A DNA stretch of 64,000 bases, taken from IMG/VR virus record IMGVR_UViG_3300021963_000023, positions 1-64,000 of that record. The stretch is one strand, 5' to 3'. Made by a program: the position numbers and the translations under genes. This document shows positions 39,720-50,565 of the stretch, in pieces. The number at the start of each line of letters is the position of its first letter. The stretch's first letter is position 1. The notes under the pieces are model-generated. The model saw only the letters and a list, made by a program, of their open reading frames with translations. It made no database searches and was not told the origin of the DNA.

Positions 39720-40116
39720 TGGTGGAGGTGACGGGACTCGAACCCGTGTCTTTCCTGTTCAACAATAAATGACTACACGTTTATTCAATTGGTTCTCAAC
39801 TGACAAATAGTAAATTAATTACAGGAAATTTACAATACTGTTTTTGACTGGATTTTCAAGAGCCGTCAAATTTGCTCCAACACTCTTCGGGTGGTATTAC
39901 ACCTTAAAGGCTTCTGTTCCTAGGTTATATGCCAGTCGACCCGATTGTAGTTTCGCCTTAGGCTACTGCTACGTTAGAAGTTGCAAGCAAGCCTGCTACT
40001 TCCATGTTGTTATAAACGTTGCCGTCTAAAATTTTCCACCATGTATTAAAGTCATAGATGAAGTCTGACTACGTGCCATTTACCCCTGATACCTGAAATC
40101 AATGCCAGGCACCCCC
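39720..40116 (-). ncRNA. ssrA: tmRNA, tag (A)GNVYNNMEVAGLLATSNVAVA*
   Basis: 5' GGGGGUG pairs with 3' CACCUCC-ACCA with G3.U70; GGUUCGAGUCC T-arm; UAGAC before the resume codon; tag ORF 40023-39958; 397 nt. Confidence 0.93.
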
Positions 40117-41998: not shown

Positions 41999-42649
41999 TC
42001 AAATAATTTTCTTATTTTCTTTTCTATTGGTAAATAACATTTTATCGAATTTAACGAATTCAATCTTATTTTTATCTAGTACGTGTGATAACCCCAATCC
42101 CTCTCCATTACCGTTACCAATATATTGAGACGGCACTACAGTGCTTATCCAATCAAATATTGGTTTTATCTTTTCAAGATCAAATAAAACTTGTGACACA
42201 TTATTAATATTGGGAAAATAGAAAATCCACTCTAGTGGTAATTTTAAATGATTGTATTCTATTTTATTTAAATTAAAATAAAACAATAAATCTTTCCAAT
42301 AAAAGTCTTCAATATAGTTTATAAAAAGATCATTTTCCCAGTTGTCATAATAAAGTACATTTTTATCACCGGAAAAGTTTTTTATAAATTCATCATTTAC
42401 ATTACCTATCCAATCAGAGTCAATATATAACACATCTGTTTTATGCTTTTCTATTAACCTAAGTGAAAAAATTAATTTATCAAAATATGAAAAAATCTTA
42501 TTTTCATATAGTTGAGTATCATATCCAGTAAAAAAATTGGGGTTATCTGTTAATATTTTAATATCATATCCACGTTTTTTAAATCTATCTAAATGTGGTA
42601 AGCAAATTTTAGCATATTGTTCACCAACAGCAACAATTGATAAAATCAT
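41999..42649 (-). CDS. glycosyltransferase-like protein
   Basis: ILTDNP, YIDSD DxD motif. Confidence 0.5.
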   Translation of the reverse strand: MILSIVAVGEQYAKICLPHLDRFKKRGYDIKILTDNPNFFTGYDTQLYENKIFSYFDKLIFSLRLIEKHKTDVLYIDSDWIGNVNDEFIKNFSGDKNVLYYDNWENDLFINYIEDFYWKDLLFYFNLNKIEYNHLKLPLEWIFYFPNINNVSQVLFDLEKIKPIFDWISTVVPSQYIGNGNGEGLGLSHVLDKNKIEFVKFDKMLFTNRKENKKII

Positions 42650-43791
42650 TATATTAGACTTGAATTTTTTGTGAATATGGTATTATTGGTTATTTTCTCA
42701 TATAACAATTCTGCTTCCGAATATTTTGGTAATTTTAACCCTGGGTATATTTCTGCAAAATATTTGTGAACATTAATAACATACTCTTCACCAAATGTTT
42801 CGATTATTTCATTTATAACAATAACCTGCCATAGTTGATACCATTGCATAAATGAAAAATGGGTATACCCAAAGAATTTAAAATTAAGCATGTTTTTTAT
42901 ATCATCAATTGACACTATAGTGTGATCATTTAATTTTTGTTCATTACAGCACGAGCATCTAGATGTTGTTCTAAAATCAAACGGGAATTGTGTTTTGTAT
43001 ATACTAGGATTTGTTTTGGCTTGAGTTTCAAGGGTAATGGATAATGGAACATCTTTAAACAAAAATGTTTCATCTTTTTTAACCAGTTCTTTATAGTCTG
43101 ACTCACCAGACAAAAGATATTGATGTATCATTAATTGTTCTATATAACAAGGGCCCATTTCTTGTTTATCAATGACTTCCTTATTTTCATAATAATGTGC
43201 AATAGCTTGTTCACACGCAATTTTAAAATTTTTGTGATCTCTAACCAACACAATACTCATGTTTGGTATATGGGTGAAATTAAAATTAGTTTTAAGTTCT
43301 GTTGAATGTTTATCAAAAAGATCTAGGTATAATTTTAAATAAACGTGATTAATCCAAAAGTGATTATGACTATTTAATTTTTCATCTTTATTATTAATTA
43401 AAAACGGTATATGCTCACCTAAAGTACCTTTCATATTACTTAAGTGTTTCATATCCGGATGCGAGAATAAAAAAGAAGATTTAATTTGAGTGAAATCAAC
43501 CTTAGAAAAGAAAACGGAGTCCGTATCAATATGTAAAAAGGGTTCTTCTATTTCCTTATATGTGTAGATCTTGCTTAAGCTATATTGTGTGCAGTCTACG
43601 TTGTTTAATAATTCAGTGTTAATGGTTGTGTATGGGACACCAATTTTAGTTATTTGCTTCGCTTCTATTTCTGTTGTATATAGATGTATATTCCCATAAT
43701 GTTTTTTAGCATATAATGCACTCAGCATTTGAATGTATATCCTTTCTTTCCATATAATTTCTCTGGATGCAAATGTGTGAACTATTTTCAT
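42649..43791 (-). CDS. glycosyltransferase-like protein (DUF6734-like)
   Basis: HYGNIHLYT, KIYTY...EPFLHIDTD, IEQ. Confidence 0.55.
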   Translation of the reverse strand: MKIVHTFASREIIWKERIYIQMLSALYAKKHYGNIHLYTTEIEAKQITKIGVPYTTINTELLNNVDCTQYSLSKIYTYKEIEEPFLHIDTDSVFFSKVDFTQIKSSFLFSHPDMKHLSNMKGTLGEHIPFLINNKDEKLNSHNHFWINHVYLKLYLDLFDKHSTELKTNFNFTHIPNMSIVLVRDHKNFKIACEQAIAHYYENKEVIDKQEMGPCYIEQLMIHQYLLSGESDYKELVKKDETFLFKDVPLSITLETQAKTNPSIYKTQFPFDFRTTSRCSCCNEQKLNDHTIVSIDDIKNMLNFKFFGYTHFSFMQWYQLWQVIVINEIIETFGEEYVINVHKYFAEIYPGLKLPKYSEAELLYEKITNNTIFTKNSSLI

Positions 43792-43823
43792 AATAAAATA
43801 TACACATTTTTTAAATAAAAAAC

Positions 43824-43851
43824 AAAAAAAAAGTCAGAATTTCTTCTGACT
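43824..43851 (-). terminator. intrinsic terminator downstream of the large ncRNA
   Basis: AGTCAGAA-GAAA-TTCTGACT followed by a T-tract. Confidence 0.7.
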
Positions 43852-43926
43852 GGTTTTTCTTAAGGCCGAACGGTTTTAAAACGTTCCAATTCCACCACTT
43901 TGTTTTATTAAACAAAGAAAATAAAA

Positions 43927-44728
43927 AGGCTGAGATTACACCATTTAACGATTGACTTTGAGACATTATTTTTTTCTTCTCTTATCCACTACCTTTTGAG
44001 TAGTACCAATCAGCGACGGTCAATTAGATTAACCAATCCTTAAGTCGTTAGATACTCTTTTAATACTTATTACTCTTCGAGGTTGCCACCCCAATTAGTC
44101 CTTGCGGGACTAGAGAACTTTCTCAAAAATCATGTTGGGCTTGGGACCCCTTCATGGCCGAGAACCTCTCTCGACTGTGTAGTCACCTGTCTCCAACGAC
44201 TGACGAGCACTTTTCCTTTATTGTTTGTAGTTGTTAAACCAAAATTAACAAAGTTTGTTGGTTCCGAATGTGGAAAGTAGCGGCTCGTCTGCCAGCCAAG
44301 CCACCTTTTGAGCGACTCGATACTAAACTACTCTCTGAGATATCCCTATCTCCATATTTTTGGACTCCTTCGAAATTAAACTCTTGGTAGAATTTAACTA
44401 AGGATGACAACAGCACCACCTGTTTTTCACCATACCTTTCGGTTTTAAGACGCCCCTAATATTGAATCACACAATTATAAGATTGGAAATCCTACTTCTC
44501 GTAATAACTCTACAGATTATTCTTATTGGTGTTCCCACCTCAATCAAACAACTCGGATTGCTTGATCATCGAACCACTTTCCCTACAGTGTTACCCTCAG
44601 TACTTAAGGTTCAACGATATTCTGCTTGCCTACTCAAGATCCATTACTGAATCCGCAAAACACTTAACCAAATGCTTCACTTTATCCCACTTTCATGGTT
44701 TATTTTAATCGACCATAGGCGGCCAATA
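43927..44728 (-). ncRNA. large (~800 nt) structured ncRNA, GOLLD-like
   Basis: no credible ORF; GC-richer than flanks; many hairpins (ACC-GAAA-GGT, TAGTCC-CGCAA-GGACTA, CTAC-TCAAAAG-GTAG); own promoter and terminator; next to a phage tRNA array; size fits GOLLD; ends approximate. Confidence 0.65.
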
Positions 44729-44734
44729 TTTTTA

Positions 44735-44815
44735 AATCAAAGAACTATTTCTTGTTTTAGAAACCATCTATCTGATTTCTTTTACAAAGATACATAACAT
44801 TTTTGAAAAAACAAA
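44735..44815 (-). promoter_or_regulatory. Bacteroidetes promoter + boxA-like motif
   Basis: TTTG(44812-15)-N19-TATCTTTG(44785-92); AGTTCTTTGATT (44735-46). Confidence 0.7.
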
Positions 44816-44838
44816 CACTTTGTAAAAAATATTTTTTT

Positions 44839-45300
44839 TTATATTCTAACTAGGTGATTTGCGGCATAGGTTGTTAATGCGCCTAGGTGTTTATACCTAA
44901 CTTTATACCCCATACCTTCAACCATTCCAACAGCTTGTCTAAGAACAGAGTTTGACTTAAACCTTGAATCTGGATTTAAATCAATATCTATCCATGTTGG
45001 CTTTGGCAAACCGTTCTCTTTTAGATATTCCGCAATTTCAATGGATTTCCAAACTTCATTTAACAACCTAATTGGCATGTTATATTCCATTGGTAAAATC
45101 TCTTTATTACATAAAACGTGTGCACCTTTACCTGGAGTATATAGTGCAATCACAACACCATAAATTGTTTTTTTATGACCATAGCATTGTGAATCTGATC
45201 CAATAAGAATTTCCACCCCACTTCTTAGTGAAACATATTCTTTGATGTAATTGATTACATCTGGTACTGGTGTCCCGTAGAGTGTTTTAAATTCTTTCAT
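44839..45300 (-). CDS. RNase H-like YkuK/DUF458 family protein
   Basis: IGSDSQ, GKGA, RLLNEVWKS, IDIDLN, AANH. Confidence 0.8.
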   Translation of the reverse strand: MKEFKTLYGTPVPDVINYIKEYVSLRSGVEILIGSDSQCYGHKKTIYGVVIALYTPGKGAHVLCNKEILPMEYNMPIRLLNEVWKSIEIAEYLKENGLPKPTWIDIDLNPDSRFKSNSVLRQAVGMVEGMGYKVRYKHLGALTTYAANHLVRI

Positions 45301-45327
45301 TTTTTTTTAATTTAATTCATTTTATTG

Positions 45328-45499
45328 CTGTGGTAGCAGGATTCGAACCGTGCAGATGGAGATTCAATTAGTAACAAAGCGCTTGCAAGCCGGTGGTCTA
45401 CCCCGATATTACTAATCTATTTCTTTGTCCACGTCCGGGAGACAACCGGATGCGTTTGCCAAGGTCATAACTGAGACAACCAAATTTCGCCATACCACA
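45328..45499 (-). ncRNA. giant tRNA-like RNA (GUC anticodon, D-loop insert, ~80-nt variable arm)
   Basis: 7-bp acceptor UGUGGUA/UACCACA, UCCGG/CCGGA anticodon stem, GGUUCGAAUCC. Confidence 0.65.
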
Positions 45500-45593
45500 A
45501 TATTTGAACTAACTCGCTGGAAACCTTATAACTGATCTGATCAGCTTATGGGTTAAGTACTCCGTTTATGTTAGTTCCTCGTACTCCAAGTTG

Positions 45594-45677
45594 CGGAGAG
45601 TACTGGATTCGAACCAGTGCACCGATTGCTCGATGACAGTTTAGCAAACTGCTCCATTACCGCTCTGGCAACTCTCC
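45594..45677 (-). tRNA. tRNA-Ser(GCT)
   Basis: cloverleaf with long variable arm. Confidence 0.9.
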
Positions 45678-45682
45678 TAAAT

Positions 45683-45982
45683 TTATTTTTTAACTTTTCT
45701 TTTATTTAAAAATTCATAAAACTTATTTTCATAGTTTATAAAGTGTGTCATAGCAAACCATTTACCAAAAACACTACCACCTATATAAACAATAATAACA
45801 ACCCAATCACTTGCAAATAATCTTTCTAATGAAAAATATATTGAACCCAAAGAAACGAGATTAATCCATATTGAATTGAATACAAGTTGCTTAACCTTAT
45901 TCTCATAGGTATATTTTATTTCCATTGTTTTAAAAATGTTGAATAATACCTGAAAGAAAAACACTAATACATATAACCACAT
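45683..45982 (-). CDS. small three-TM membrane protein
   Basis: hydrophobic ORF between tRNAs. Confidence 0.7.
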   Translation of the reverse strand: MWLYVLVFFFQVLFNIFKTMEIKYTYENKVKQLVFNSIWINLVSLGSIYFSLERLFASDWVVIIVYIGGSVFGKWFAMTHFINYENKFYEFLNKRKVKK

Positions 45983-45998
45983 AACATCATTTTTTTTG

Positions 45999-46069
45999 TT
46001 GTCCCTCTAGGATTCGAACCTAAACAAACTGCACCAAAAACAGTTGTGCTACCGTTACACCAAAGGACA
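45999..46069 (-). tRNA. tRNA-Gln(TTG)
   Basis: cloverleaf. Confidence 0.88.
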
Positions 46070-46134
46070 ATATAATCATCACGGAGAATGTAGATTTTCA
46101 CTAACTCGATTTAGCGGCCTCTATGATGATTTTG

Positions 46135-46207
46135 AGCGAATAACAGGCTTCGAACCTGCAACCCCCAGTTTGGAAAACTAGTGCTCTACCAATTGAGCTA
46201 CATTCGC
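46135..46207 (-). tRNA. tRNA-Gly(TCC)
   Basis: cloverleaf. Confidence 0.9.
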
Positions 46208-46305
46208 ATTCATAGTAGGTATGTGAGTACCCACCTCACAACACTACTACGTTTTAATGGATGAAAAACATCTATCTTTCTTTCGGGCTACCATTAAGCC
46301 CCATG

Positions 46306-46379
46306 AGCTTCCTGTCAGAATCGAACTGACGACCTACTGATTACAAATCAGTCGCTCTGGCCTGCTGAGCTAAGGAAGC
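46306..46379 (-). tRNA. tRNA-Thr(TGT)
   Basis: cloverleaf. Confidence 0.9.
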
Positions 46380-46384
46380 GTTTG

Positions 46385-46458
46385 TGGACCAGCCTGGGCT
46401 CGAACCAGGGACCTATTCATTATGAGTGAAGTGCTCTAACCAACTGAGCTACAAGTCC
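46385..46458 (-). tRNA. tRNA-CAT (Ile2 or Met)
   Basis: cloverleaf, CTCATAA loop, Ile-like body. Confidence 0.85.
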
Positions 46459-46464
46459 AAAAGG

Positions 46465-46583
46465 TGCCGGTGGAAGGATTGCTTACCTCCACGGTGTCCA
46501 TTTCGGATACACCACCTATCTAGAATACGGGACGTCTAATAATTTCTATTCGAATTCAAAATTATTCATTCCGCCACACCGGC
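46465..46583 (-). ncRNA. aberrant tRNA-Leu-like RNA with D-loop hairpin insert and probable CUA anticodon
   Basis: GCCGGUG/CACCGGC acceptor, A73, long variable arm, loop UUCUAGA, non-canonical T-loop. Confidence 0.55.
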
Positions 46584-46591
46584 ATATATCT

Positions 46592-47131
46592 TTACTCTAC
46601 ATTAGTTGTTGGATCATACTGAAATTTAATATGTGTGAATCCAAGTTCTAAATTATTCGTTATTTCAATTTTATCTTCGTCAATGTTATATGAACACATG
46701 TCACAATTCCAAAGCGAATTCCTTAATCCTTCTTTAAATTTTTTCATGTCTTTAATCCCAATTAAATTAAACACACATTCTAAAGTTTCTGGTAGATATT
46801 TTTTTTCTAAAAACTTGTTATGATTAAAATATGCTTCCCATTTTTCTTTGTTTCCTGAATCACCTCTTTCATGTGTGCAACTGTTAAACCACTCATCATC
46901 TAGTCTATTATTTTCAATTTCATCTTTTTCACTTACCTTAATAACTTTTCTTGAATGGATCATATCAGTTGATAATGTTGGGAGGTGATTATCGACAATA
47001 TTTTCGCCAATATAATATCCTAATTGGTAATCCATACTTACATTCTCAAGATACTCTTCATTTTTTTTAATTTGACCAATCTTATATTCTGGTTTTTTTA
47101 TTTCTTCTAATATTTCTTCAAGCGATCTCAT
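46592..47131 (-). CDS. hypothetical protein
   Basis: 179-aa ORF within the tRNA array. Confidence 0.75.
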   Translation of the reverse strand: MRSLEEILEEIKKPEYKIGQIKKNEEYLENVSMDYQLGYYIGENIVDNHLPTLSTDMIHSRKVIKVSEKDEIENNRLDDEWFNSCTHERGDSGNKEKWEAYFNHNKFLEKKYLPETLECVFNLIGIKDMKKFKEGLRNSLWNCDMCSYNIDEDKIEITNNLELGFTHIKFQYDPTTNVE

Positions 47132-47158
47132 GTTAATTAAATTTATTTCATTTTATTG

Positions 47159-47239
47159 TTGGGATAGACGGACTCGAACCGCCGAACTCGATGAGAGCTG
47201 ATTTACAGTCAGCCGCAATTGCCACTATGCGATATCCCA
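47159..47239 (-). tRNA. tRNA-Tyr(GTA)
   Basis: cloverleaf with variable arm. Confidence 0.88.
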
Positions 47240-47247
47240 ATTTAATG

Positions 47248-47329
47248 TGACCAAGGAGAGACTCGAACTCTCAAGCCTTACGGCACCAGATCCTAAATCT
47301 GGCGTGTCTACCAATTCCACCACTCGGCC
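47248..47329 (-). tRNA. tRNA-Leu(TAG)
   Basis: cloverleaf. Confidence 0.92.
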
Positions 47330-47336
47330 ATTGTTG

Positions 47337-47409
47337 CGCTCCCTGAGGGTCACGATCCCCCGACCCCAAAATTAACAGTTTTGTGCTCTACCAACTGAGC
47401 TAAGGAAGC
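47337..47409 (-). tRNA. tRNA-Asn(GTT)
   Basis: cloverleaf; atypical T-loop ATCGTGA. Confidence 0.82.
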
Positions 47410-47414
47410 GAATG

Positions 47415-47489
47415 TAGGGTAAAGAGGACTCGAACCTCCACGATGTCTTGCTCCCAAAGCAAGCGGCCTAGCCATTGGCCCATTACCCT
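47415..47489 (-). tRNA. tRNA-Pro(TGG)
   Basis: cloverleaf. Confidence 0.85.
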
Positions 47490-47496
47490 ATTTTAG

Positions 47497-47570
47497 TGAT
47501 TCGGAAAGGATTCGAACCTTTGACCCCAAACTTAGAAGGTTTGTGCTCTATCCAGCTGAGCTACCGAACC
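47497..47570 (-). tRNA. tRNA-Arg(TCT)
   Basis: cloverleaf. Confidence 0.92.
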
Positions 47571-47685
47571 AATTAATGTAATGTCTGTACGGTTTGTATC
47601 AAATCCGCACCTTTATACGTGCTTCAAATGTTTCCATTTCATACATAGCGTCCGTTCCGTCACCTATTTCTAAGTCATTACATTG

Positions 47686-47770
47686 TACCTGGGGCGGGAC
47701 TTGAACCCGCACGGAACTTTCGTCCCAACAGATTTTAAGTCTGTCATGTATACCATTTCATCACCCAGGC
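47686..47770 (-). tRNA. tRNA-Leu(TAA)
   Basis: cloverleaf. Confidence 0.9.
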
Positions 47771-47786
47771 ATTTGTTTTTCCAATA

Positions 47787-47833
47787 TGTCAAAGAACTTT
47801 ATCAAATATAAGAATAATAAATTATAAAACAAA
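47787..47833 (-). promoter_or_regulatory. Bacteroidetes promoter + boxA
   Basis: TTTG-N19-TATATTTG (47803-47833), then AGTTCTTTGACA (47787-47798). Confidence 0.72.
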
Positions 47834-47863
47834 AAACCCGAACATTTTTAGTTGTTCGGGTTT
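47826..47863 (-). terminator. terminator of putative attenuator 2
   Basis: AAACCCGAACA/TGTTCGGGTTT plus T-tract. Confidence 0.75.
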
Positions 47864-47884
47864 CGATATTAGTTAAAAAAAGTA

Positions 47885-47992
47885 TTATCCTTTATTGATA
47901 TCCGAACATATGTAGCATAATGGTTGCACACCATACCCATTACCATTGTTAAGGGGTCTCGTACTTGTCAATATGTTATTTATATTCTTCAT
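47885..47992 (-). CDS. 35-aa putative leader peptide MKNINNILTSTRPLNNGNGYGVQPLCYICSDINKG
   Basis: read by eye; lies between a TATCTTTG promoter (48011-48018) and a terminator. Confidence 0.55.
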   Translation of the reverse strand: MKNINNILTSTRPLNNGNGYGVQPLCYICSDINKG

Positions 47993-48041
47993 CGTTTTAA
48001 TAAGTATACGCAAAGATAAGAAAAAACTGAATACTAAAAAA

Positions 48042-48455
48042 TTATTTTATTTTATAAGATAAACCAATTCCTGGTGAAAAATTAGAACCCACTAAATTTC
48101 CTATTATCCATAGTTTCAAATCAGAAGATTTTAATGCGTTATACCCAATAAATGCGTTTATCTTGTTTTCGTTATTAACTGGTTGTATACCAGCCCCGAT
48201 TAAAATTTTATCGGGTTGTAACATTTTTAAAATTCCTAATTTTAAATTCGACGTGATTGAACCAGTTTTTTGGTTTGCCAAATTTGTGTCATTGTAAGGT
48301 GCTCCGACGTATAACCCCCACGTGTTTTTTAATGCGCCGACCGTAATGTAACCATCTAATCCTTTGTTTGTTGCTGATACGAACACTTCTTTTTGTCCGT
48401 AGGTCACTGCCTTCACTCCCAATAGCATCATGACCAATATAATTTTTAGTTTCAT
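48042..48455 (-). CDS. small secreted beta-strand/barrel-like protein
   Basis: signal peptide; C-terminal GIGLSYKIK. Confidence 0.65.
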   Translation of the reverse strand: MKLKIILVMMLLGVKAVTYGQKEVFVSATNKGLDGYITVGALKNTWGLYVGAPYNDTNLANQKTGSITSNLKLGILKMLQPDKILIGAGIQPVNNENKINAFIGYNALKSSDLKLWIIGNLVGSNFSPGIGLSYKIK

Positions 48456-48512
48456 CTATGTAGAGACCGTAGTCTCTGTCTATCTTAATAAATATAAAGA
48501 TAAATTTGTTTG

Positions 48513-48584
48513 TACTCGGTACGGGATTCGAACCCGTGCTACGTCCGTGAAAGGGACGCGACCTAACCACTAGTCGAACCGAGC
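48513..48584 (-). tRNA. tRNA-Glu(TTC)
   Basis: cloverleaf. Confidence 0.92.
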
Positions 48585-48589
48585 AATCA

Positions 48590-49018
48590 TTAATGATTTT
48601 TATGATTACCCTTGTGATTATCAATTAAAGGAAATTTTAAACCAAACGTTTTTAATTCTTTATCAGTTGATTGAGAATAAACAAAACTAATTGGAGAATT
48701 TTTTATTGGTTTAAAATCAATACCCCACATTGCCATAGTTGAGTGATTTTGCATATAACAAGCGGATAGCATTGCCCCAACTCTATTTTTTAAAAATCCA
48801 TATCTACTTCCCACCATTGTAATATCATAACCACCAATCGTTTTTGTAAAAGATATATGGGCCGCAATGTTTTTTGTTATGTTTTGCATTGCTTCAACTT
48901 CTATATAACCTTTATTCTTTCCGTGTAGATTTAGATTACCTCCCGTAACCGAAATCATTTGTCCTTTTGCAATTGTAGAAAGAAATACAACACATAGGAT
49001 TAAAAATGAATGTTTCAT
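48590..49018 (-). CDS. small secreted beta-strand/barrel-like protein
   Basis: signal peptide; alternating beta pattern, TFGLKFPL. Confidence 0.65.
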   Translation of the reverse strand: MKHSFLILCVVFLSTIAKGQMISVTGGNLNLHGKNKGYIEVEAMQNITKNIAAHISFTKTIGGYDITMVGSRYGFLKNRVGAMLSACYMQNHSTMAMWGIDFKPIKNSPISFVYSQSTDKELKTFGLKFPLIDNHKGNHKNH

Positions 49019-49035
49019 ATATTTTATTTTTTTTT

Positions 49036-49125
49036 TGGCGGAGGCTCAGGGATTCGAACCCCAGATACCGTTTCCGGTATGACGGTTTTCAAGACCGTTC
49101 CATTCAACCACTCTGGCAAGCCTCC
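49036..49125 (-). tRNA. tRNA-Ser(TGA)
   Basis: cloverleaf, encoded CCA. Confidence 0.93.
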
Positions 49126-49148
49126 ATTAAAGGAACAAAAATTCAAGG

Positions 49149-49222
49149 CGGACTGTACGGGACTCGAACCCGTGAACTCTACCGTGACAGGGTAGCATGA
49201 TAACCAACTTCACCAACAATCC
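49149..49222 (-). tRNA. tRNA-Asp(GTC)
   Basis: cloverleaf. Confidence 0.9.
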
Positions 49223-49224
49223 GT

Positions 49225-49492
49225 GTTTGATCCTAACTCAGCTTAAGTTGCTCCATCCAAGTCTTGCTCTGGTTAACAAAGTCCTCGATGAGTTAGTTTC
49301 AAATAAAATAACAAGTTTTTCGTACGCTTTTGTACATCATAACCGATTATTTCTAACCGGTGGTTACATTTTCGTCAATTGGTTAATTACTCCCGACTTA
49401 TTGTAACTCTACCCACACCGCTTTAATACCGCGAATCAAGACGGCTTTTCGGGATTTATATACCGTGGGCTTCCACCACAGTCGTCACCTGT
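49225..49492 (-). ncRNA. candidate ~265-nt ncRNA
   Basis: no credible ORF; own TTTG-N19-TATATTTG promoter (49497-49527); local hairpins. Confidence 0.45.
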
Positions 49493-49535
49493 TATACAAA
49501 TATAAATTAAATTTTTTAAAATTCAAAATATATTT

Positions 49536-49608
49536 TGGTTGCGGAGCCAAGAATCGAACTTGGATGCACAGGCTTATGATACCTGGCGGGTTACCTAACC
49601 TCTCCGCA
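49536..49608 (-). tRNA. tRNA-Met(CAT) with reduced D-arm
   Basis: UGCGGAG/CUCCGCA acceptor, CAT loop, TTCGA, encoded CCA. Confidence 0.75.
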
Positions 49609-49611
49609 ATA

Positions 49612-49688
49612 TGGGGTGATCGACGAGATTCGAACTCGCTTTATTCTAGCGCCACAAGCTAGTGCTCTACCATACGAGCATCGATCAC
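49612..49688 (-). tRNA. tRNA-His(GTG)
   Basis: cloverleaf, C73, CCA. Confidence 0.88.
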
Positions 49689-49690
49689 AG

Positions 49691-49761
49691 AGTCAAGTAT
49701 TGGATTCGAACCAATGTACGAGGTTTTGCAGACCTCTACCTAACCACTCGGCCAACCTGAC
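49691..49761 (-). tRNA. tRNA-Cys(GCA)
   Basis: cloverleaf, U73. Confidence 0.9.
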
Positions 49762-49821
49762 TTTTTGTTCACTTATGTTCTCTGTTCACGGACCGTGAAC
49801 AAACAAAATTTGTGAACACTG

Positions 49822-49893
49822 AGGTCTCTAAAGGATTTGAACCCTTACTTCAACGTCCGTAGCGTTGCGTGCTATCCGTTACACCAAAAGACC
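49822..49893 (-). tRNA. tRNA-Arg(ACG)
   Basis: cloverleaf. Confidence 0.88.
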
Positions 49894-49897
49894 AATT

Positions 49898-50101
49898 TTA
49901 CTTCCATTGAGTTTTTCGGTTATACTTCCAACCTCTATACTCTCTTCTTTTATGGGATTCAATCGGTTTCCCGTTACCGTGTCTTCCATGAACAAAAGTT
50001 GGGGAACAGTCATAATACCAACTTCCGTTTCTTTTCTGACATATGAAACAATAGTTGTGTGATTGTTTCTTTGCTTTTACTTTGTACTCTTTGTTTGTCA
50101 T
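49898..50101 (-). CDS. small basic Cys/His protein
   Basis: CFIC...C...H; co-oriented with the tRNAs. Confidence 0.55.
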   Translation of the reverse strand: MTNKEYKVKAKKQSHNYCFICQKRNGSWYYDCSPTFVHGRHGNGKPIESHKRREYRGWKYNRKTQWK

Positions 50102-50180
50102 ATTGCATTAGTTTAACTAATGCTGGTCATATTTCTTTTTCATACTTTACAAATTGTAAGTGTTTTACTTTACATATTAT

Positions 50181-50254
50181 TGGCACGGGTGGAGAGATTC
50201 GAACTCCCATCGACGGTTTTGGAGACCGGAATGCTACCATTGCACCACACCCGT
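50181..50254 (-). tRNA. tRNA-Trp(CCA)
   Basis: cloverleaf, CCA. Confidence 0.9.
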
Positions 50255-50259
50255 GTATG

Positions 50260-50333
50260 TGATCCCTACAAGACTCGAACTTGTGACTCCCTCATTAAAA
50301 GTGAGGTGCTCTAGCCAACTGAGCTAAGAGATC
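50260..50333 (-). tRNA. tRNA-Lys(TTT)
   Basis: cloverleaf. Confidence 0.92.
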
Positions 50334-50338
50334 AATTG

Positions 50339-50411
50339 TGGAGAAAGTTGGTTACGCTCCAACTCCTAAGGATTTTCAGTCCTTCGCTTCTACTAAGTTA
50401 GCTTCATCTCC
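50339..50411 (-). tRNA. tRNA-Phe(GAA)
   Basis: cloverleaf; atypical T-loop AGCGTAA. Confidence 0.78.
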
Positions 50412-50416
50412 TTATG

Positions 50417-50489
50417 TTGGAATGATAAGACTCGAACCTATAACCTTCCGCGTATCAGGCGGATGCTCTCACCATTGAGCTACATTCCA
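50417..50489 (-). tRNA. tRNA-Ile(GAT)
   Basis: cloverleaf, loop CTGATAC. Confidence 0.85.
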
Positions 50490-50492
50490 ATT

Positions 50493-50565
50493 TGGTGGAC
50501 ACGTAGGGAATCGAACCCTTTCACTCTGATTGCAAATCAGGTGGTCTGCCATTGACATCCGGCCC
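50493..50565 (-). tRNA. tRNA-Ala(TGC)
   Basis: G3.U70, TGC loop, CCA; imperfect acceptor stem. Confidence 0.75.

What the first reader, a model, noticed from the sequence alone, without database searches (positions are those of the whole stretch)
45328..45499. 172-nt giant tRNA-like RNA with two structured insertions
Seen: perfect acceptor and anticodon stems, Asp-type identity elements (GUC, C38, G73) but U37, and a Leu/Ser-type D-arm interrupted by a ~22-nt hairpin. The variable arm is ~80 nt and branched (AUUAGUAA/UUACUAAU stem with two inner hairpins), and the T-stem has a bulge. GGTTGTCTC occurs twice, in the D-loop insert and across the anticodon arm. A normal tRNA-Asp is present elsewhere, and the stems are intact rather than decayed. 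Inference: a tRNA mimic (anticodon-nuclease decoy, synthetase or ribosome ligand) or an intron-containing precursor.
Basis: partly seen in the sequence, partly recalled or inferred. Interest (0 to 1): 0.72.

Follow-up and report, generated by a model that had tools for sequence, protein, structure and literature searches.

The report
Giant tRNA-like RNA family, phage copy
The 172-base element is a real, expressed, oversized tRNA-shaped RNA from a family I found in no database or paper searched, shared by Bacteroidota bacteria and their giant phages, and it probably no longer decodes codons.

Summary
On the minus strand of 45328-45499 lies a 172-nt cloverleaf. It has a 7-bp acceptor stem, a Leu-type D arm with a 19-nt hairpin insert, an anticodon arm (loop UUGUCUC), an 80-nt branched variable arm and a normal T arm with one bulge.

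ARAGORN and Rfam 15 do not call it. It is nonetheless one member of a large family: over 100 distinct copies in IMG/VR phage contigs and about 96 in Bacteroidota chromosomes, where it is a standalone and sometimes tandem gene.

Covariation is decisive. On 55 non-redundant phage copies, 98% of cells pair and 28 of 40 pairs show double compensatory changes. No shuffle out of 500 matched this.

Metatranscriptome contigs cover it full length and unspliced, at depth 288. Flanking sequence reaches only 0-7.

G34-U35-C36, C38 and G73 are conserved, but U33 and purine-37 are not. I infer a non-decoding RNA that may still be charged.

Phage copies carry a hairpin that is almost always a perfect palindrome, in 19 variants. 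This is the published signature of a symmetric kissing loop, so they probably form homodimers.

Function is unknown. The intron-precursor reading is not supported, and the decoy reading is untested.

The parts
45328..45499 (-). Whole giant tRNA-like RNA, 172 nt (U1 at 45499, discriminator G73 at 45328)
   Evidence: Scores 149.8 bits against family model R1 and is the only copy in the 251-kb phage record. Covered full length by metatranscriptome contigs.
45493..45499 (-). Acceptor stem, 5' strand (pairs with 45329-45335). U1-A72 and G2-C71 are invariant in the alignments; U3-A70 is nearly so.
   Evidence: 100% of cells paired, and 4 of 7 pairs show double compensatory changes.
45452..45490 (-). 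D arm: 3-bp stem with a Leu-type D loop that keeps A14, G18, G19 and A21
   Evidence: Stem covaries. The core nucleotides are invariant. The family model's next-best hits are the phage tRNA-Leu genes.
45463..45481 (-). 19-nt hairpin inserted in the D loop (6-bp stem, loop CUCAGUU)
   Evidence: Present, replaced by other hairpins (often palindromic), or absent among relatives.
45434..45450 (-). Anticodon arm: 5-bp stem with loop UUGUCUC. GUC lies at 45441-45443, with U37 and C38.
   Evidence: All 5 pairs covary. G34, U35 and C36 are invariant in phage copies, while positions 33 and 37 vary.
45354..45433 (-). 80-nt variable arm. Contains P1 (45429-45432 / 45356-45359), P1b (45422-45424 / 45360-45362) and P2 (45409-45417 / 45366-45374).
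   Evidence: P1, P1b and P2 all covary.
45391..45405 (-). Hairpin H1, carrying the nearly invariant GGGGUAGACCACC motif
   Evidence: The core is invariant in 55 phage copies and only the outer pair covaries. It was used as the search pattern. It is missing in the shortest bacterial forms.
45381..45390 (-). Hairpin H2 = GCUUGCAAGC, a perfect 10-nt palindrome and the proposed symmetric kissing or duplex dimerisation site
   Evidence: Between 96 and 98 of 100 unique phage copies carry a perfect palindrome here, in 19 distinct variants. As a monomer hairpin it is worth -0.1 kcal/mol; as an intermolecular duplex, -16.3 kcal/mol.
45336..45353 (-). T arm: 5-bp stem with a bulged C (45350) and loop UUCGAAU
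   Evidence: 100% paired and 3 pairs covary. The bulge is present in about a third of relatives.
45593..50565 (-). Array of 21 ARAGORN-called tRNA genes plus one weak Rfam tRNA match, all on the same strand. The RNA is the last member of the array.
   Evidence: Most tRNA genes here encode N73 plus C74 only, as the candidate does.
44839..45300 (-). YkuK-type RNase H-like gene (PF04308), 28 nt downstream of the RNA
   Evidence: Used as the anchor for relatives. Co-occurs with the RNA in bacterial genomes.

Best explanation
The element is the phage copy of a family of oversized tRNA-derived RNAs, about 110 to 210 nt long. I found the family in no database or paper I searched.

Shown:
- The RNA keeps a complete class-II (Leu-like) tRNA body and carries a large structured domain in place of the variable arm.
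- The family is chromosomal in part of the Bacteroidota (Chitinophagales, Saprospiraceae, Cytophagales, Sphingobacteriales). Freshwater jumbo phages carry it as the last gene of their tRNA arrays.
- It accumulates as a stable, full-length, unspliced RNA.

Inferred:
- It is cut out like a tRNA (RNase P at U1, 3' trimming, CCA completion). The evidence is that it abuts tRNA-Ser by 5 nt in relatives, encodes G73-C74 as its neighbour tRNAs do, and its leader is absent from RNA contigs.
- It is not an ordinary decoder, because U33 and purine-37 are not maintained.
- The nucleotides that are maintained (G34, U35, C36, C38, G73) are the known AspRS identity set. My best guess, about 40%, is that it is charged with aspartate and used outside ribosomal decoding, or that it acts as a ligand for an Asp-tRNA-recognising protein.
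- Phage copies have an added palindromic hairpin, and often a palindromic D-loop hairpin. I put about 55% on these making the RNA pair with itself as a symmetric homodimer.

The cellular role is unknown. A YkuK-type RNase H-like protein is the only candidate partner found.
For: Family and structure:
- Homologues lie upstream of the PF04308 gene in 29 of 75 related phage loci. They score above 100 bits, against about 41 bits for ordinary tRNAs.
- A pattern scan found more than 120 viral contigs and 116 genome contigs. Of these, 96 model hits lie in Bacteroidota loci, some tandem.
- In an even phylum sample the RNA is present in 15-16 of 151 genomes.
- Covariation on 55 phage copies: 98.0% of cells paired, 28 of 40 pairs with double changes, score 0.549 against 0.184 in shuffles (0 of 500 reached it) and about 0.1 in slid controls.
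- The bacterial set also covaries: 20 of 39 pairs.

tRNA nature:
- U8, A14, G18, G19, A21 and the T loop are invariant.
- The model's next-best hits are tRNA-Leu and tRNA-Tyr.
- With the variable arm cut to P1 in silico, ARAGORN of 55 copies tRNA-Asp.

Expression:
- Contig depth is 288 and 22.6 over the RNA, against 0-7 in the flanks.
- One contig spans the full length, and there are no joints inside.

Loop statistics. 3' end signature.

Dimerisation:
- 19 palindrome variants occur in 96-98 of 100 copies.
- Folding energies favour the intermolecular duplex.
- The same palindrome-to-palindrome logic was validated by cryo-EM for OLE and GOLLD (PMC12286853).
Against: - No aminoacylation, CCA-end, or 5'/3' end data exist. 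The contigs give only approximate ends.
- AspRS is a class II enzyme that approaches tRNA from the variable-loop side (established knowledge). An 80-nt arm might therefore block it.
- A Leu-like body with G73 and G2-C71 could instead suit SerRS.
- One bacterial genome has UUC in place of GUC.
- The phage encodes no AspRS-type, GatB or CCA-enzyme gene.
- The palindromes could partly reflect a mutational origin, namely template-switch insertion of perfect inverted repeats.
- A 4-nt loop is small for a kissing complex.
- Bacterial gene neighbourhoods give no consistent partner.
- My literature search was limited to open-access text, so prior description cannot be excluded.
Confidence: 0.6

Rival explanations
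1. It is a working elongator tRNA-Asp isoacceptor. It is charged and used on the ribosome, and merely tolerates two expansions at permissive sites (D-loop alpha region and variable arm).
For: - The tRNA core is complete, with a GUC anticodon and G73.
- It sits in a tRNA array and has the same 3' gene signature as its neighbours.
- ARAGORN of 55 trimmed copies tRNA-Asp.
Against: - Position 37 is U, C or (once) A instead of a purine, and position 33 is U, C or A. Both positions are near-universal in decoders (established knowledge).
- A normal tRNA-Asp is present in the same phage.
- The arm carries conserved sequence motifs, which expansion tolerance does not require.
- One host has UUC in place of GUC.
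Confidence: 0.12
2. It is a decoy or antidote for a tRNA-targeting enzyme (an anticodon nuclease, or a toxin that modifies the acceptor end). It presents an Asp-like anticodon loop and acceptor end that soak up the enzyme.
For: - It is carried by phages next to a full tRNA set and a tmRNA.
- The anticodon-loop and acceptor-end nucleotides are the most conserved parts.
- Some D-loop inserts repeat the UGUCUC motif.
Against: - The family is a chromosomal, syntenic gene with its own terminator in many Bacteroidota. It is therefore not a phage invention.
- No defence or toxin genes recur beside it.
Confidence: 0.1
3. It is the RNA partner or substrate of the YkuK-type RNase H-like protein (PF04308). 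It would form an RNP or be processed by that protein, perhaps as a primer-like or guide-like RNA.
For: - The gene lies 28-560 nt downstream of the RNA in the window's clade.
- In 151 Bacteroidota genomes the protein occurs in 11 of 16 genomes with the RNA, against 7 of 135 without it. Fisher p = 7e-9, not corrected for phylogeny.
Against: - Only 16 of 102 phage loci chosen by the RNA hold the gene nearby.
- The two are not adjacent in bacteria.
- Five genomes with the RNA lack the protein.
- The lineage overlap could be purely phylogenetic.
- The protein family is uncharacterised (PMC3985635).
Confidence: 0.15
4. It is an intron-containing tRNA precursor. One or both insertions are removed to give a normal-size tRNA.
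Against: - Metatranscriptome contigs carry the unspliced form at high depth, with no joints inside.
- The arm is conserved with covariation across phages and bacteria.
- There is no Rfam intron or ribozyme hit.
- The D insert is simply absent in many relatives.
Confidence: 0.03
5. It is a decaying tRNA pseudogene with chance insertions.
For: ARAGORN and the Rfam tRNA model miss it. The single-sequence folding z-score is only -1.09.
Against: There are hundreds of homologues with compensatory changes in every helix, and the RNA is expressed.
Confidence: 0.01

Closest known systems
Class II tRNAs, especially bacterial tRNA-Leu
   Same: - 7/5 acceptor/T branch.
- 3-bp D stem with a GAAAUUGG-type D loop.
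- A helical variable arm flanked by 1 and 2 unpaired nucleotides.
- The full tertiary core.
- The family model's best non-self hits are the phage tRNA-Leu genes.
   Different: - The variable arm is 36-140 nt, with an internal loop, a junction and conserved motifs, instead of a hairpin of about 15 nt.
- G73 replaces A73.
- The anticodon loop is Asp-like and lacks the U33 / purine-37 constraints.
tRNA-Asp(GUC)
   Same: G34-U35-C36, C38 and G73, the AspRS identity set (established knowledge). The loop differs from the phage's own tRNA-Asp mainly at position 37.
   Different: - Class II body.
- U1-A72 start.
- U or C at position 37.
- Giant variable arm.
- Coexists with a normal tRNA-Asp.
allo-tRNAs and other non-canonical long-V-arm tRNAs (Mukai et al., PMC5389517)
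   Same: They are odd tRNAs found in bacteria and phage tRNA clusters. [quoted passage not shown]
   Different: Those have 8/4 or 9/3 acceptor/T branches and normal overall size, and occur in other phyla. This family is 7/5 with a much larger, sequence-conserved arm.
GOLLD / ROOL / OLE ornate RNAs
   Same: They are phage-borne, sit near tRNA islands and are very abundant. Their self-complementary loops switch between palindromes, which marks symmetric intermolecular kissing (PMC12286853). A GOLLD gene lies about 0.6 kb downstream here.
   Different: Those are 500-800 nt and not tRNA-shaped. There is no sequence or model similarity. GOLLD and this RNA do not strictly co-occur.
tmRNA tRNA-like domain and bacterial Y RNA (YrlA)
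   Same: They are tRNA mimicry in a larger stable RNA, and are also carried by phages.
   Different: - tmRNA lacks an anticodon arm and carries an ORF and the G3-U70 Ala identity.
- YrlA places its 5'/3' ends in the Ro-binding stem.
- Neither Rfam model matches.

Membership tests
Canonical elongator tRNA (Rfam RF00005) | Cloverleaf with a 7-bp acceptor stem, a 5-bp T stem and GTPsiC-type loop, and a D loop with G18 G19 | tested here: met
   all helices covary and the core nucleotides are invariant.
Canonical elongator tRNA (Rfam RF00005) | Recognised by standard tRNA finders or models; length about 70-95 nt | tested here: not met
   ARAGORN and Rfam (at both gathering and E<=10 thresholds) give no call. 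Family length is 109-212 nt.
Canonical elongator tRNA (Rfam RF00005) | U33 and purine-37 in a 7-nt anticodon loop | tested here: not met
   Position 37 is U in most copies, C in some and A once. Position 33 is U, C or A.
Canonical elongator tRNA (Rfam RF00005) | Aminoacylated and used by EF-Tu and the ribosome | not testable with these tools
   Needs biochemistry.
Class II (long variable arm) tRNA | Helical variable arm emerging between the anticodon and T stems; 3-bp D stem | tested here: met
   P1 covaries. The family model's next-best hits are tRNA-Leu and tRNA-Tyr.
tRNA-Asp | AspRS identity set: G34, U35, C36, C38, G73 (G10 is minor) | tested here: met
   Conserved in about 150 copies. G10 is not conserved. 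One genome has UUC instead of GUC.
Intron-containing tRNA precursor | The insertion is removed from the mature RNA | tested here: not met
   Full-length contigs with no joints inside. Caveat: contigs drop rare forms.
allo-tRNA / tRNA-Sec type | 8/4, 9/3 or 8/5 acceptor/T branch | tested here: not met
   7/5 in all copies.
tmRNA | tRNA-like domain without an anticodon arm, plus a tag ORF and pseudoknots | tested here: not met
   An anticodon arm is present and there is no Rfam tmRNA hit. The phage has a separate tmRNA.
RNAs with symmetric intermolecular kissing loops (as in OLE and GOLLD) | A self-complementary loop that covaries from palindrome to palindrome | tested here: met
   Nineteen palindromic variants with centres UGCA, GGCC, CCGG, AGCU, UCGA, CGCG and GCGC. 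Physical dimerisation was not tested.

The most novel reading that the evidence does not exclude
This is a new class of tRNA-derived ornate RNA. A host-encoded class-II tRNA has been turned into a non-decoding carrier or ligand that may still be charged, with a large functional domain in its variable arm. Jumbo phages copy it and equip it with self-complementary loops so that it assembles into symmetric dimers or higher oligomers. It possibly works with a YkuK-type RNase H-like protein.
Probability: 0.35. Interest if true: 0.9.

Novelty: new variant of a known kind. Interest (0 to 1): 0.8.

Why it matters
tRNA-shaped RNAs that have left decoding are rare, and each known case (tmRNA, Y RNA, viral tRNA-like ends, cell-wall tRNAs) opened a new piece of biology.

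This family is large, strongly constrained and expressed. It is present both in culturable Bacteroidota and in their giant phages, and standard annotation does not see it. It offers three things:

- A tractable case of how a tRNA body is reused.
- A probable new example of RNA-RNA self-assembly in phages, next to GOLLD.
- A first functional lead for the uncharacterised YkuK protein family.

It also shows that tRNA finders silently skip a recurrent gene in tRNA arrays.

Tried and rejected
- **Single-sequence folding:** z = -1.09 and the MFE is not the cloverleaf, so it is uninformative.
- **ARAGORN and Rfam:** no call at either threshold.
- **Cultured-phage collection:** only the neighbouring tRNA-Ser matched.
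- **Exact T-arm/acceptor pattern scan:** no hits.
- **Non-Bacteroidota pattern hits** (Arthrobacter, Pirellulales, Shimia and others): they failed the model, so they were chance.
- **GatCAB idea** (U1-A72 is the amidotransferase determinant): GatB is in 126 of 151 Bacteroidota and in all carriers of the RNA, so the profile says nothing. The phage has no GatB, AspRS-type or CCA-enzyme gene.
- **Bacterial neighbours:** an AsnC/Lrp regulator in 32 of 95 loci, then SufB, rhodanese, sulfur transporters, his genes, peptidases and RNR. There is no consistent partner.
- **GOLLD linkage:** not strict.
- **Pairing of the invariant GAC in hairpin H1 with the GUC anticodon:** both are invariant, and the flanking base does not covary with position 37, so there is no support.
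- **ARAGORN on a trimmed window copy:** not called, probably because of the T-stem bulge. It did of 55 trimmed relatives.
- **PDB sequence search for the YkuK-like protein:** nothing.
- **Literature:** seven searches and several papers read, none describing this RNA.

Full report
**Setting.** The window belongs to a 251-kb IMG/VR virus record, about 32% G+C and estimated 75% complete. Between 39.7 and 50.6 kb, all on the minus strand, lie four kinds of RNA gene: a tmRNA, a GOLLD RNA, the candidate, and 21 ARAGORN-called tRNA genes plus one weak Rfam tRNA match. The candidate occupies 45328-45499 on the minus strand. It lies 93 nt after tRNA-Ser(GCU) and 28 nt before a 153-aa gene of the YkuK / RNase H-like family PF04308.

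- a perfect 7-bp acceptor stem;
- a 3-bp D stem enclosing a Leu-type D loop, interrupted by a 19-nt hairpin;
- a 5-bp anticodon stem with loop UUGUCUC (GUC, U37, C38);
- an 80-nt variable arm built on the AUUAGUAA/UUACUAAU helix with two inner hairpins;
- a T arm with one bulged C;
- G73;
- the duplicated GGTTGTCTC;
- a separate normal tRNA-Asp.

ARAGORN and Rfam 15 do not report the element at gathering or permissive thresholds. The single sequence does not fold better than shuffles, with z = -1.09. On its own the sequence would therefore be inconclusive.

**Relatives in phages.** I used the neighbouring PF04308 protein as an anchor and fetched 75 related viral loci. BLASTN and a motif search found homologues of the candidate in 25 of them. 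All have perfect 7-bp acceptor stems whose positions 4-7 differ with compensation. A covariance model built later (R1) finds the RNA in 29 of the 75 loci at 106-163 bits, against about 41 bits for the best ordinary tRNA. It is single-copy in the window's genome.

**Relatives in bacteria.** I took a pattern from the conserved arm motif plus the T loop and scanned two collections with it. It also matched 116 contigs of the species-representative genome collection. The genome hits that the model confirms, 96 matches at 73-157 bits, are Bacteroidota: Saprospiraceae, Chitinophagales, Cytophagales, Sphingobacteriales, Arcicella, Cnuella, Paracnuella and Cytophaga aurantiaca. The few hits in other phyla fail the model.

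In Cnuella the RNA is a standalone gene followed by a terminator-like hairpin and a U run. Some genomes have two or three tandem copies. ARAGORN and Rfam see nothing there either. In an even sample of 151 Bacteroidota genomes the model found the RNA in 15. A sixteenth copy was cut by a contig end. So it is lineage-restricted, not phylum-wide. Lengths run from 109 to 212 nt. The shortest forms keep only the base of the variable arm: P1, P1b, a conserved internal loop and a short hairpin.

**Structure.** On 55 non-redundant phage copies I counted a 40-pair structure: acceptor, D, anticodon, P1, P1b, P2, H1 and T.

| Measure | Value |
|---|---|
| Cells forming a standard pair | 98.0% |
| Pairs with changes on both sides | 28 of 40 |
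| Covariation score, observed | 0.549 |
| Covariation score, column shuffles | 0.184 (0 of 500 shuffles reach the observed value) |
| Covariation score, 3' partners slid by 1-3 columns | about 0.1 |

RNAalifold independently recovers the same helices in phage and bacterial sets. The invariant nucleotides are those of the tRNA tertiary core: U8, A14, G18, G19, A21, G53, U54, U55, C56, A58 and C61. The model's best non-self hits are the phage's two tRNA-Leu genes and tRNA-Tyr. When the arm is cut in silico to P1 plus a tetraloop, ARAGORN of 55 copies tRNA-Asp(GTC).

The D-loop hairpin is optional. It is absent in about 30 of 100 unique phage copies and comes in several unrelated forms in the others. 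The T-stem bulge is present in about a third of copies.

**What is and is not conserved in the functional ends.** U1-A72, G2-C71 and G73 are invariant in the alignments. U3-A70 is nearly so; C3-G70 occurs.

The anticodon loop differs by source:

- Bacteria: CUGUCUC or UUGUCUC in 91 of 96 copies.
- Phages: CUGUCUC, UCGUCUC, CCGUCUC, CAGUCCC, UUGUCUC, UCGUCUA, CUGUCCC and CAGUCAC.

So G34, U35, C36 and usually C38 are held. Position 33 may be U, C or A. Position 37 is U, sometimes C, and A only once. From established tRNA biology, U33 and purine-37 serve ribosomal decoding, while G34, U35, C36, C38 and G73 are the major AspRS identity elements.

My inference is that selection keeps recognition by an Asp-tRNA-specific protein, most simply AspRS, but not decoding. 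Three caveats apply:

- AspRS approaches tRNA from the variable-loop side, so the large arm may interfere.
- A Leu-like body with G73 and G2-C71 is also close to serine identity.
- Two tandem short copies in one genome have UUC instead of GUC.

**Maturation and expression.** In many relatives the RNA starts 5 nt after the discriminator of tRNA-Ser. Most tRNA genes of this phage encode the discriminator plus one C and no CCA, and the candidate does the same.

Four public metatranscriptomes hold parts of the region. Laid on 43800-46500, their contigs give depth 288 and 22.6 over the candidate. They give 0 over the 93-nt leader and tRNA-Ser, and 0-7 over the downstream gene. One contig spans 45328-45501 without gaps, and no joint falls inside the RNA.

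That contig continues, after 3 further letters, into a second and slightly different copy. It therefore comes from a relative with tandem genes, not from a circle.

These are assembler contigs, so the ends are approximate and rare spliced forms would be missed.

**Phage-specific palindromes.** After hairpin H1, phage copies have a short hairpin, H2. In 96-98 of 100 unique sequences this segment is a perfect palindrome of 8-12 nt. There are 19 distinct versions, with central tetranucleotides UGCA, GGCC, CCGG, AGCU, UCGA, CGCG or GCGC.

Adjacent loop nucleotides cannot pair within one hairpin. Repeated switching between palindromes therefore points to pairing between two molecules. Folding energies agree: as a monomer hairpin the segment is worth -0.1 to -2.6 kcal/mol, and as an intermolecular duplex -16 to -24 kcal/mol.

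The same argument, palindrome-to-palindrome covariation such as GGCC to GAUC or AGCU, was used and confirmed by cryo-EM for symmetric kissing loops of OLE and GOLLD (PMC12286853). Many D-loop inserts are also perfect palindromes. Bacterial copies lack this feature and instead have a non-palindromic hairpin before H1. I therefore propose that phage copies homodimerise. A mutational origin of perfect inverted repeats is the alternative. It does not explain why the central four bases stay self-complementary across 19 variants.

**Search for a partner.** Bacterial neighbourhoods are heterogeneous: a divergent AsnC/Lrp regulator in 32 of 95 loci, then SufB, rhodanese, sulfur transporters, his genes, peptidases and RNR.

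U1-A72 is the GatCAB determinant, but GatB is nearly universal in the phylum, so its profile is uninformative. The phage has no AspRS-type, GatB or CCA-enzyme gene.

The PF04308 protein is the only lead. It lies directly downstream in the window's clade. In the 151-genome sample it occurs in 11 of 16 genomes with the RNA, against 7 of 135 without it. Fisher p = 7e-9, not corrected for shared ancestry.

Against it, only 16 of 102 phage loci chosen by the RNA pattern hold the gene nearby. The family is uncharacterised; it is placed in the RNase H1 clade (PMC3985635).

**Comparison and novelty.** The RNA works like a class II tRNA in architecture and like tRNA-Asp in its recognition nucleotides. 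It fails the tests for a canonical decoder on size, detectability, U33 and R37. It also fails the tests for intron-containing precursors, allo-tRNA/Sec types and tmRNA.

No Rfam 15 family matches. Seven literature searches, including reviews of non-canonical tRNAs and surveys of phage structured RNAs, turned up no description. That search covers only open text, so prior description cannot be excluded.

I rate it a new variant of a known kind (tRNA-derived non-coding RNA), with high interest.

Noticed in passing
window 43930-44706 (-): The Rfam GOLLD match covers only 43927-44335 (314 bits). Metatranscriptome contigs cover 43930-44706 continuously at depths up to about 170,000. The transcript is therefore about 777 nt, with the less conserved 5' half upstream of the Rfam model. 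Some contigs skip 44424-44516 or 44450-44516, which suggests length variants among strains.
   Followed up: partly
window 39720-40116 (-): The phage encodes a tmRNA with tag peptide GNVYNNMEVAGLLATSNVAVA. Relatives also carry a tmRNA 2-4 kb beyond the tRNA array.
   Followed up: no
window 45593-50565 (-): Most tRNA genes of the array end with the discriminator plus a single C and no CCA. The phage has no PF01743 CCA-adding enzyme. No Ala or Val tRNA was called in the window. A weak tRNA-like match at 50496-50565 (29.7 bits) has a poorly paired acceptor stem.
   Followed up: partly
window 45500-45592 (-): A 93-nt spacer separates tRNA-Ser from the giant tRNA-like RNA here. In many relatives the two are only 5 nt apart. 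The spacer is absent from RNA contigs.
   Followed up: partly
L259:7144-7661, L253, L277, L205, L202, L215: Some Bacteroidota genomes carry two or three tandem copies of the RNA. One metatranscriptome contig shows two slightly different copies 5 nt apart.
   Followed up: partly
L323:1001-1331 (genome G139): Two tandem minimal copies (109-110 nt) have loop CUUUCUC, i.e. UUC instead of GUC, and a variable arm of only about 36 nt. They may define the minimal functional core, or a second specificity.
   Followed up: partly
D-loop inserts of relatives (e.g. L003:3803-3972, L018:3653-3812, L058:4932-5088, L068:5037-5193): Many D-loop insert hairpins are themselves perfect palindromes, with centres such as GUAC, CUAG, UAUA and CGCG. 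Another class shares the loop CUCAGUU and the UGUCUC motif with the anticodon loop.
   Followed up: partly
window 45391-45405 (-), hairpin H1: The invariant H1 motif contains GAC, the complement of the invariant GUC anticodon. No covariation is available to test a codon-anticodon-like contact, and the flanking base does not track position 37.
   Followed up: partly
L025:1590-1652: A freshwater-1 RNA (Rfam RF02979, 73.8 bits) lies in the tRNA region of a related phage that lacks the giant tRNA-like RNA.
   Followed up: no
window 42649-43791 (-): A 380-aa protein with a DUF6734 domain lies just downstream of GOLLD. Several ORFs interspersed in the tRNA array (99-179 aa) have no Pfam match.
   Followed up: no
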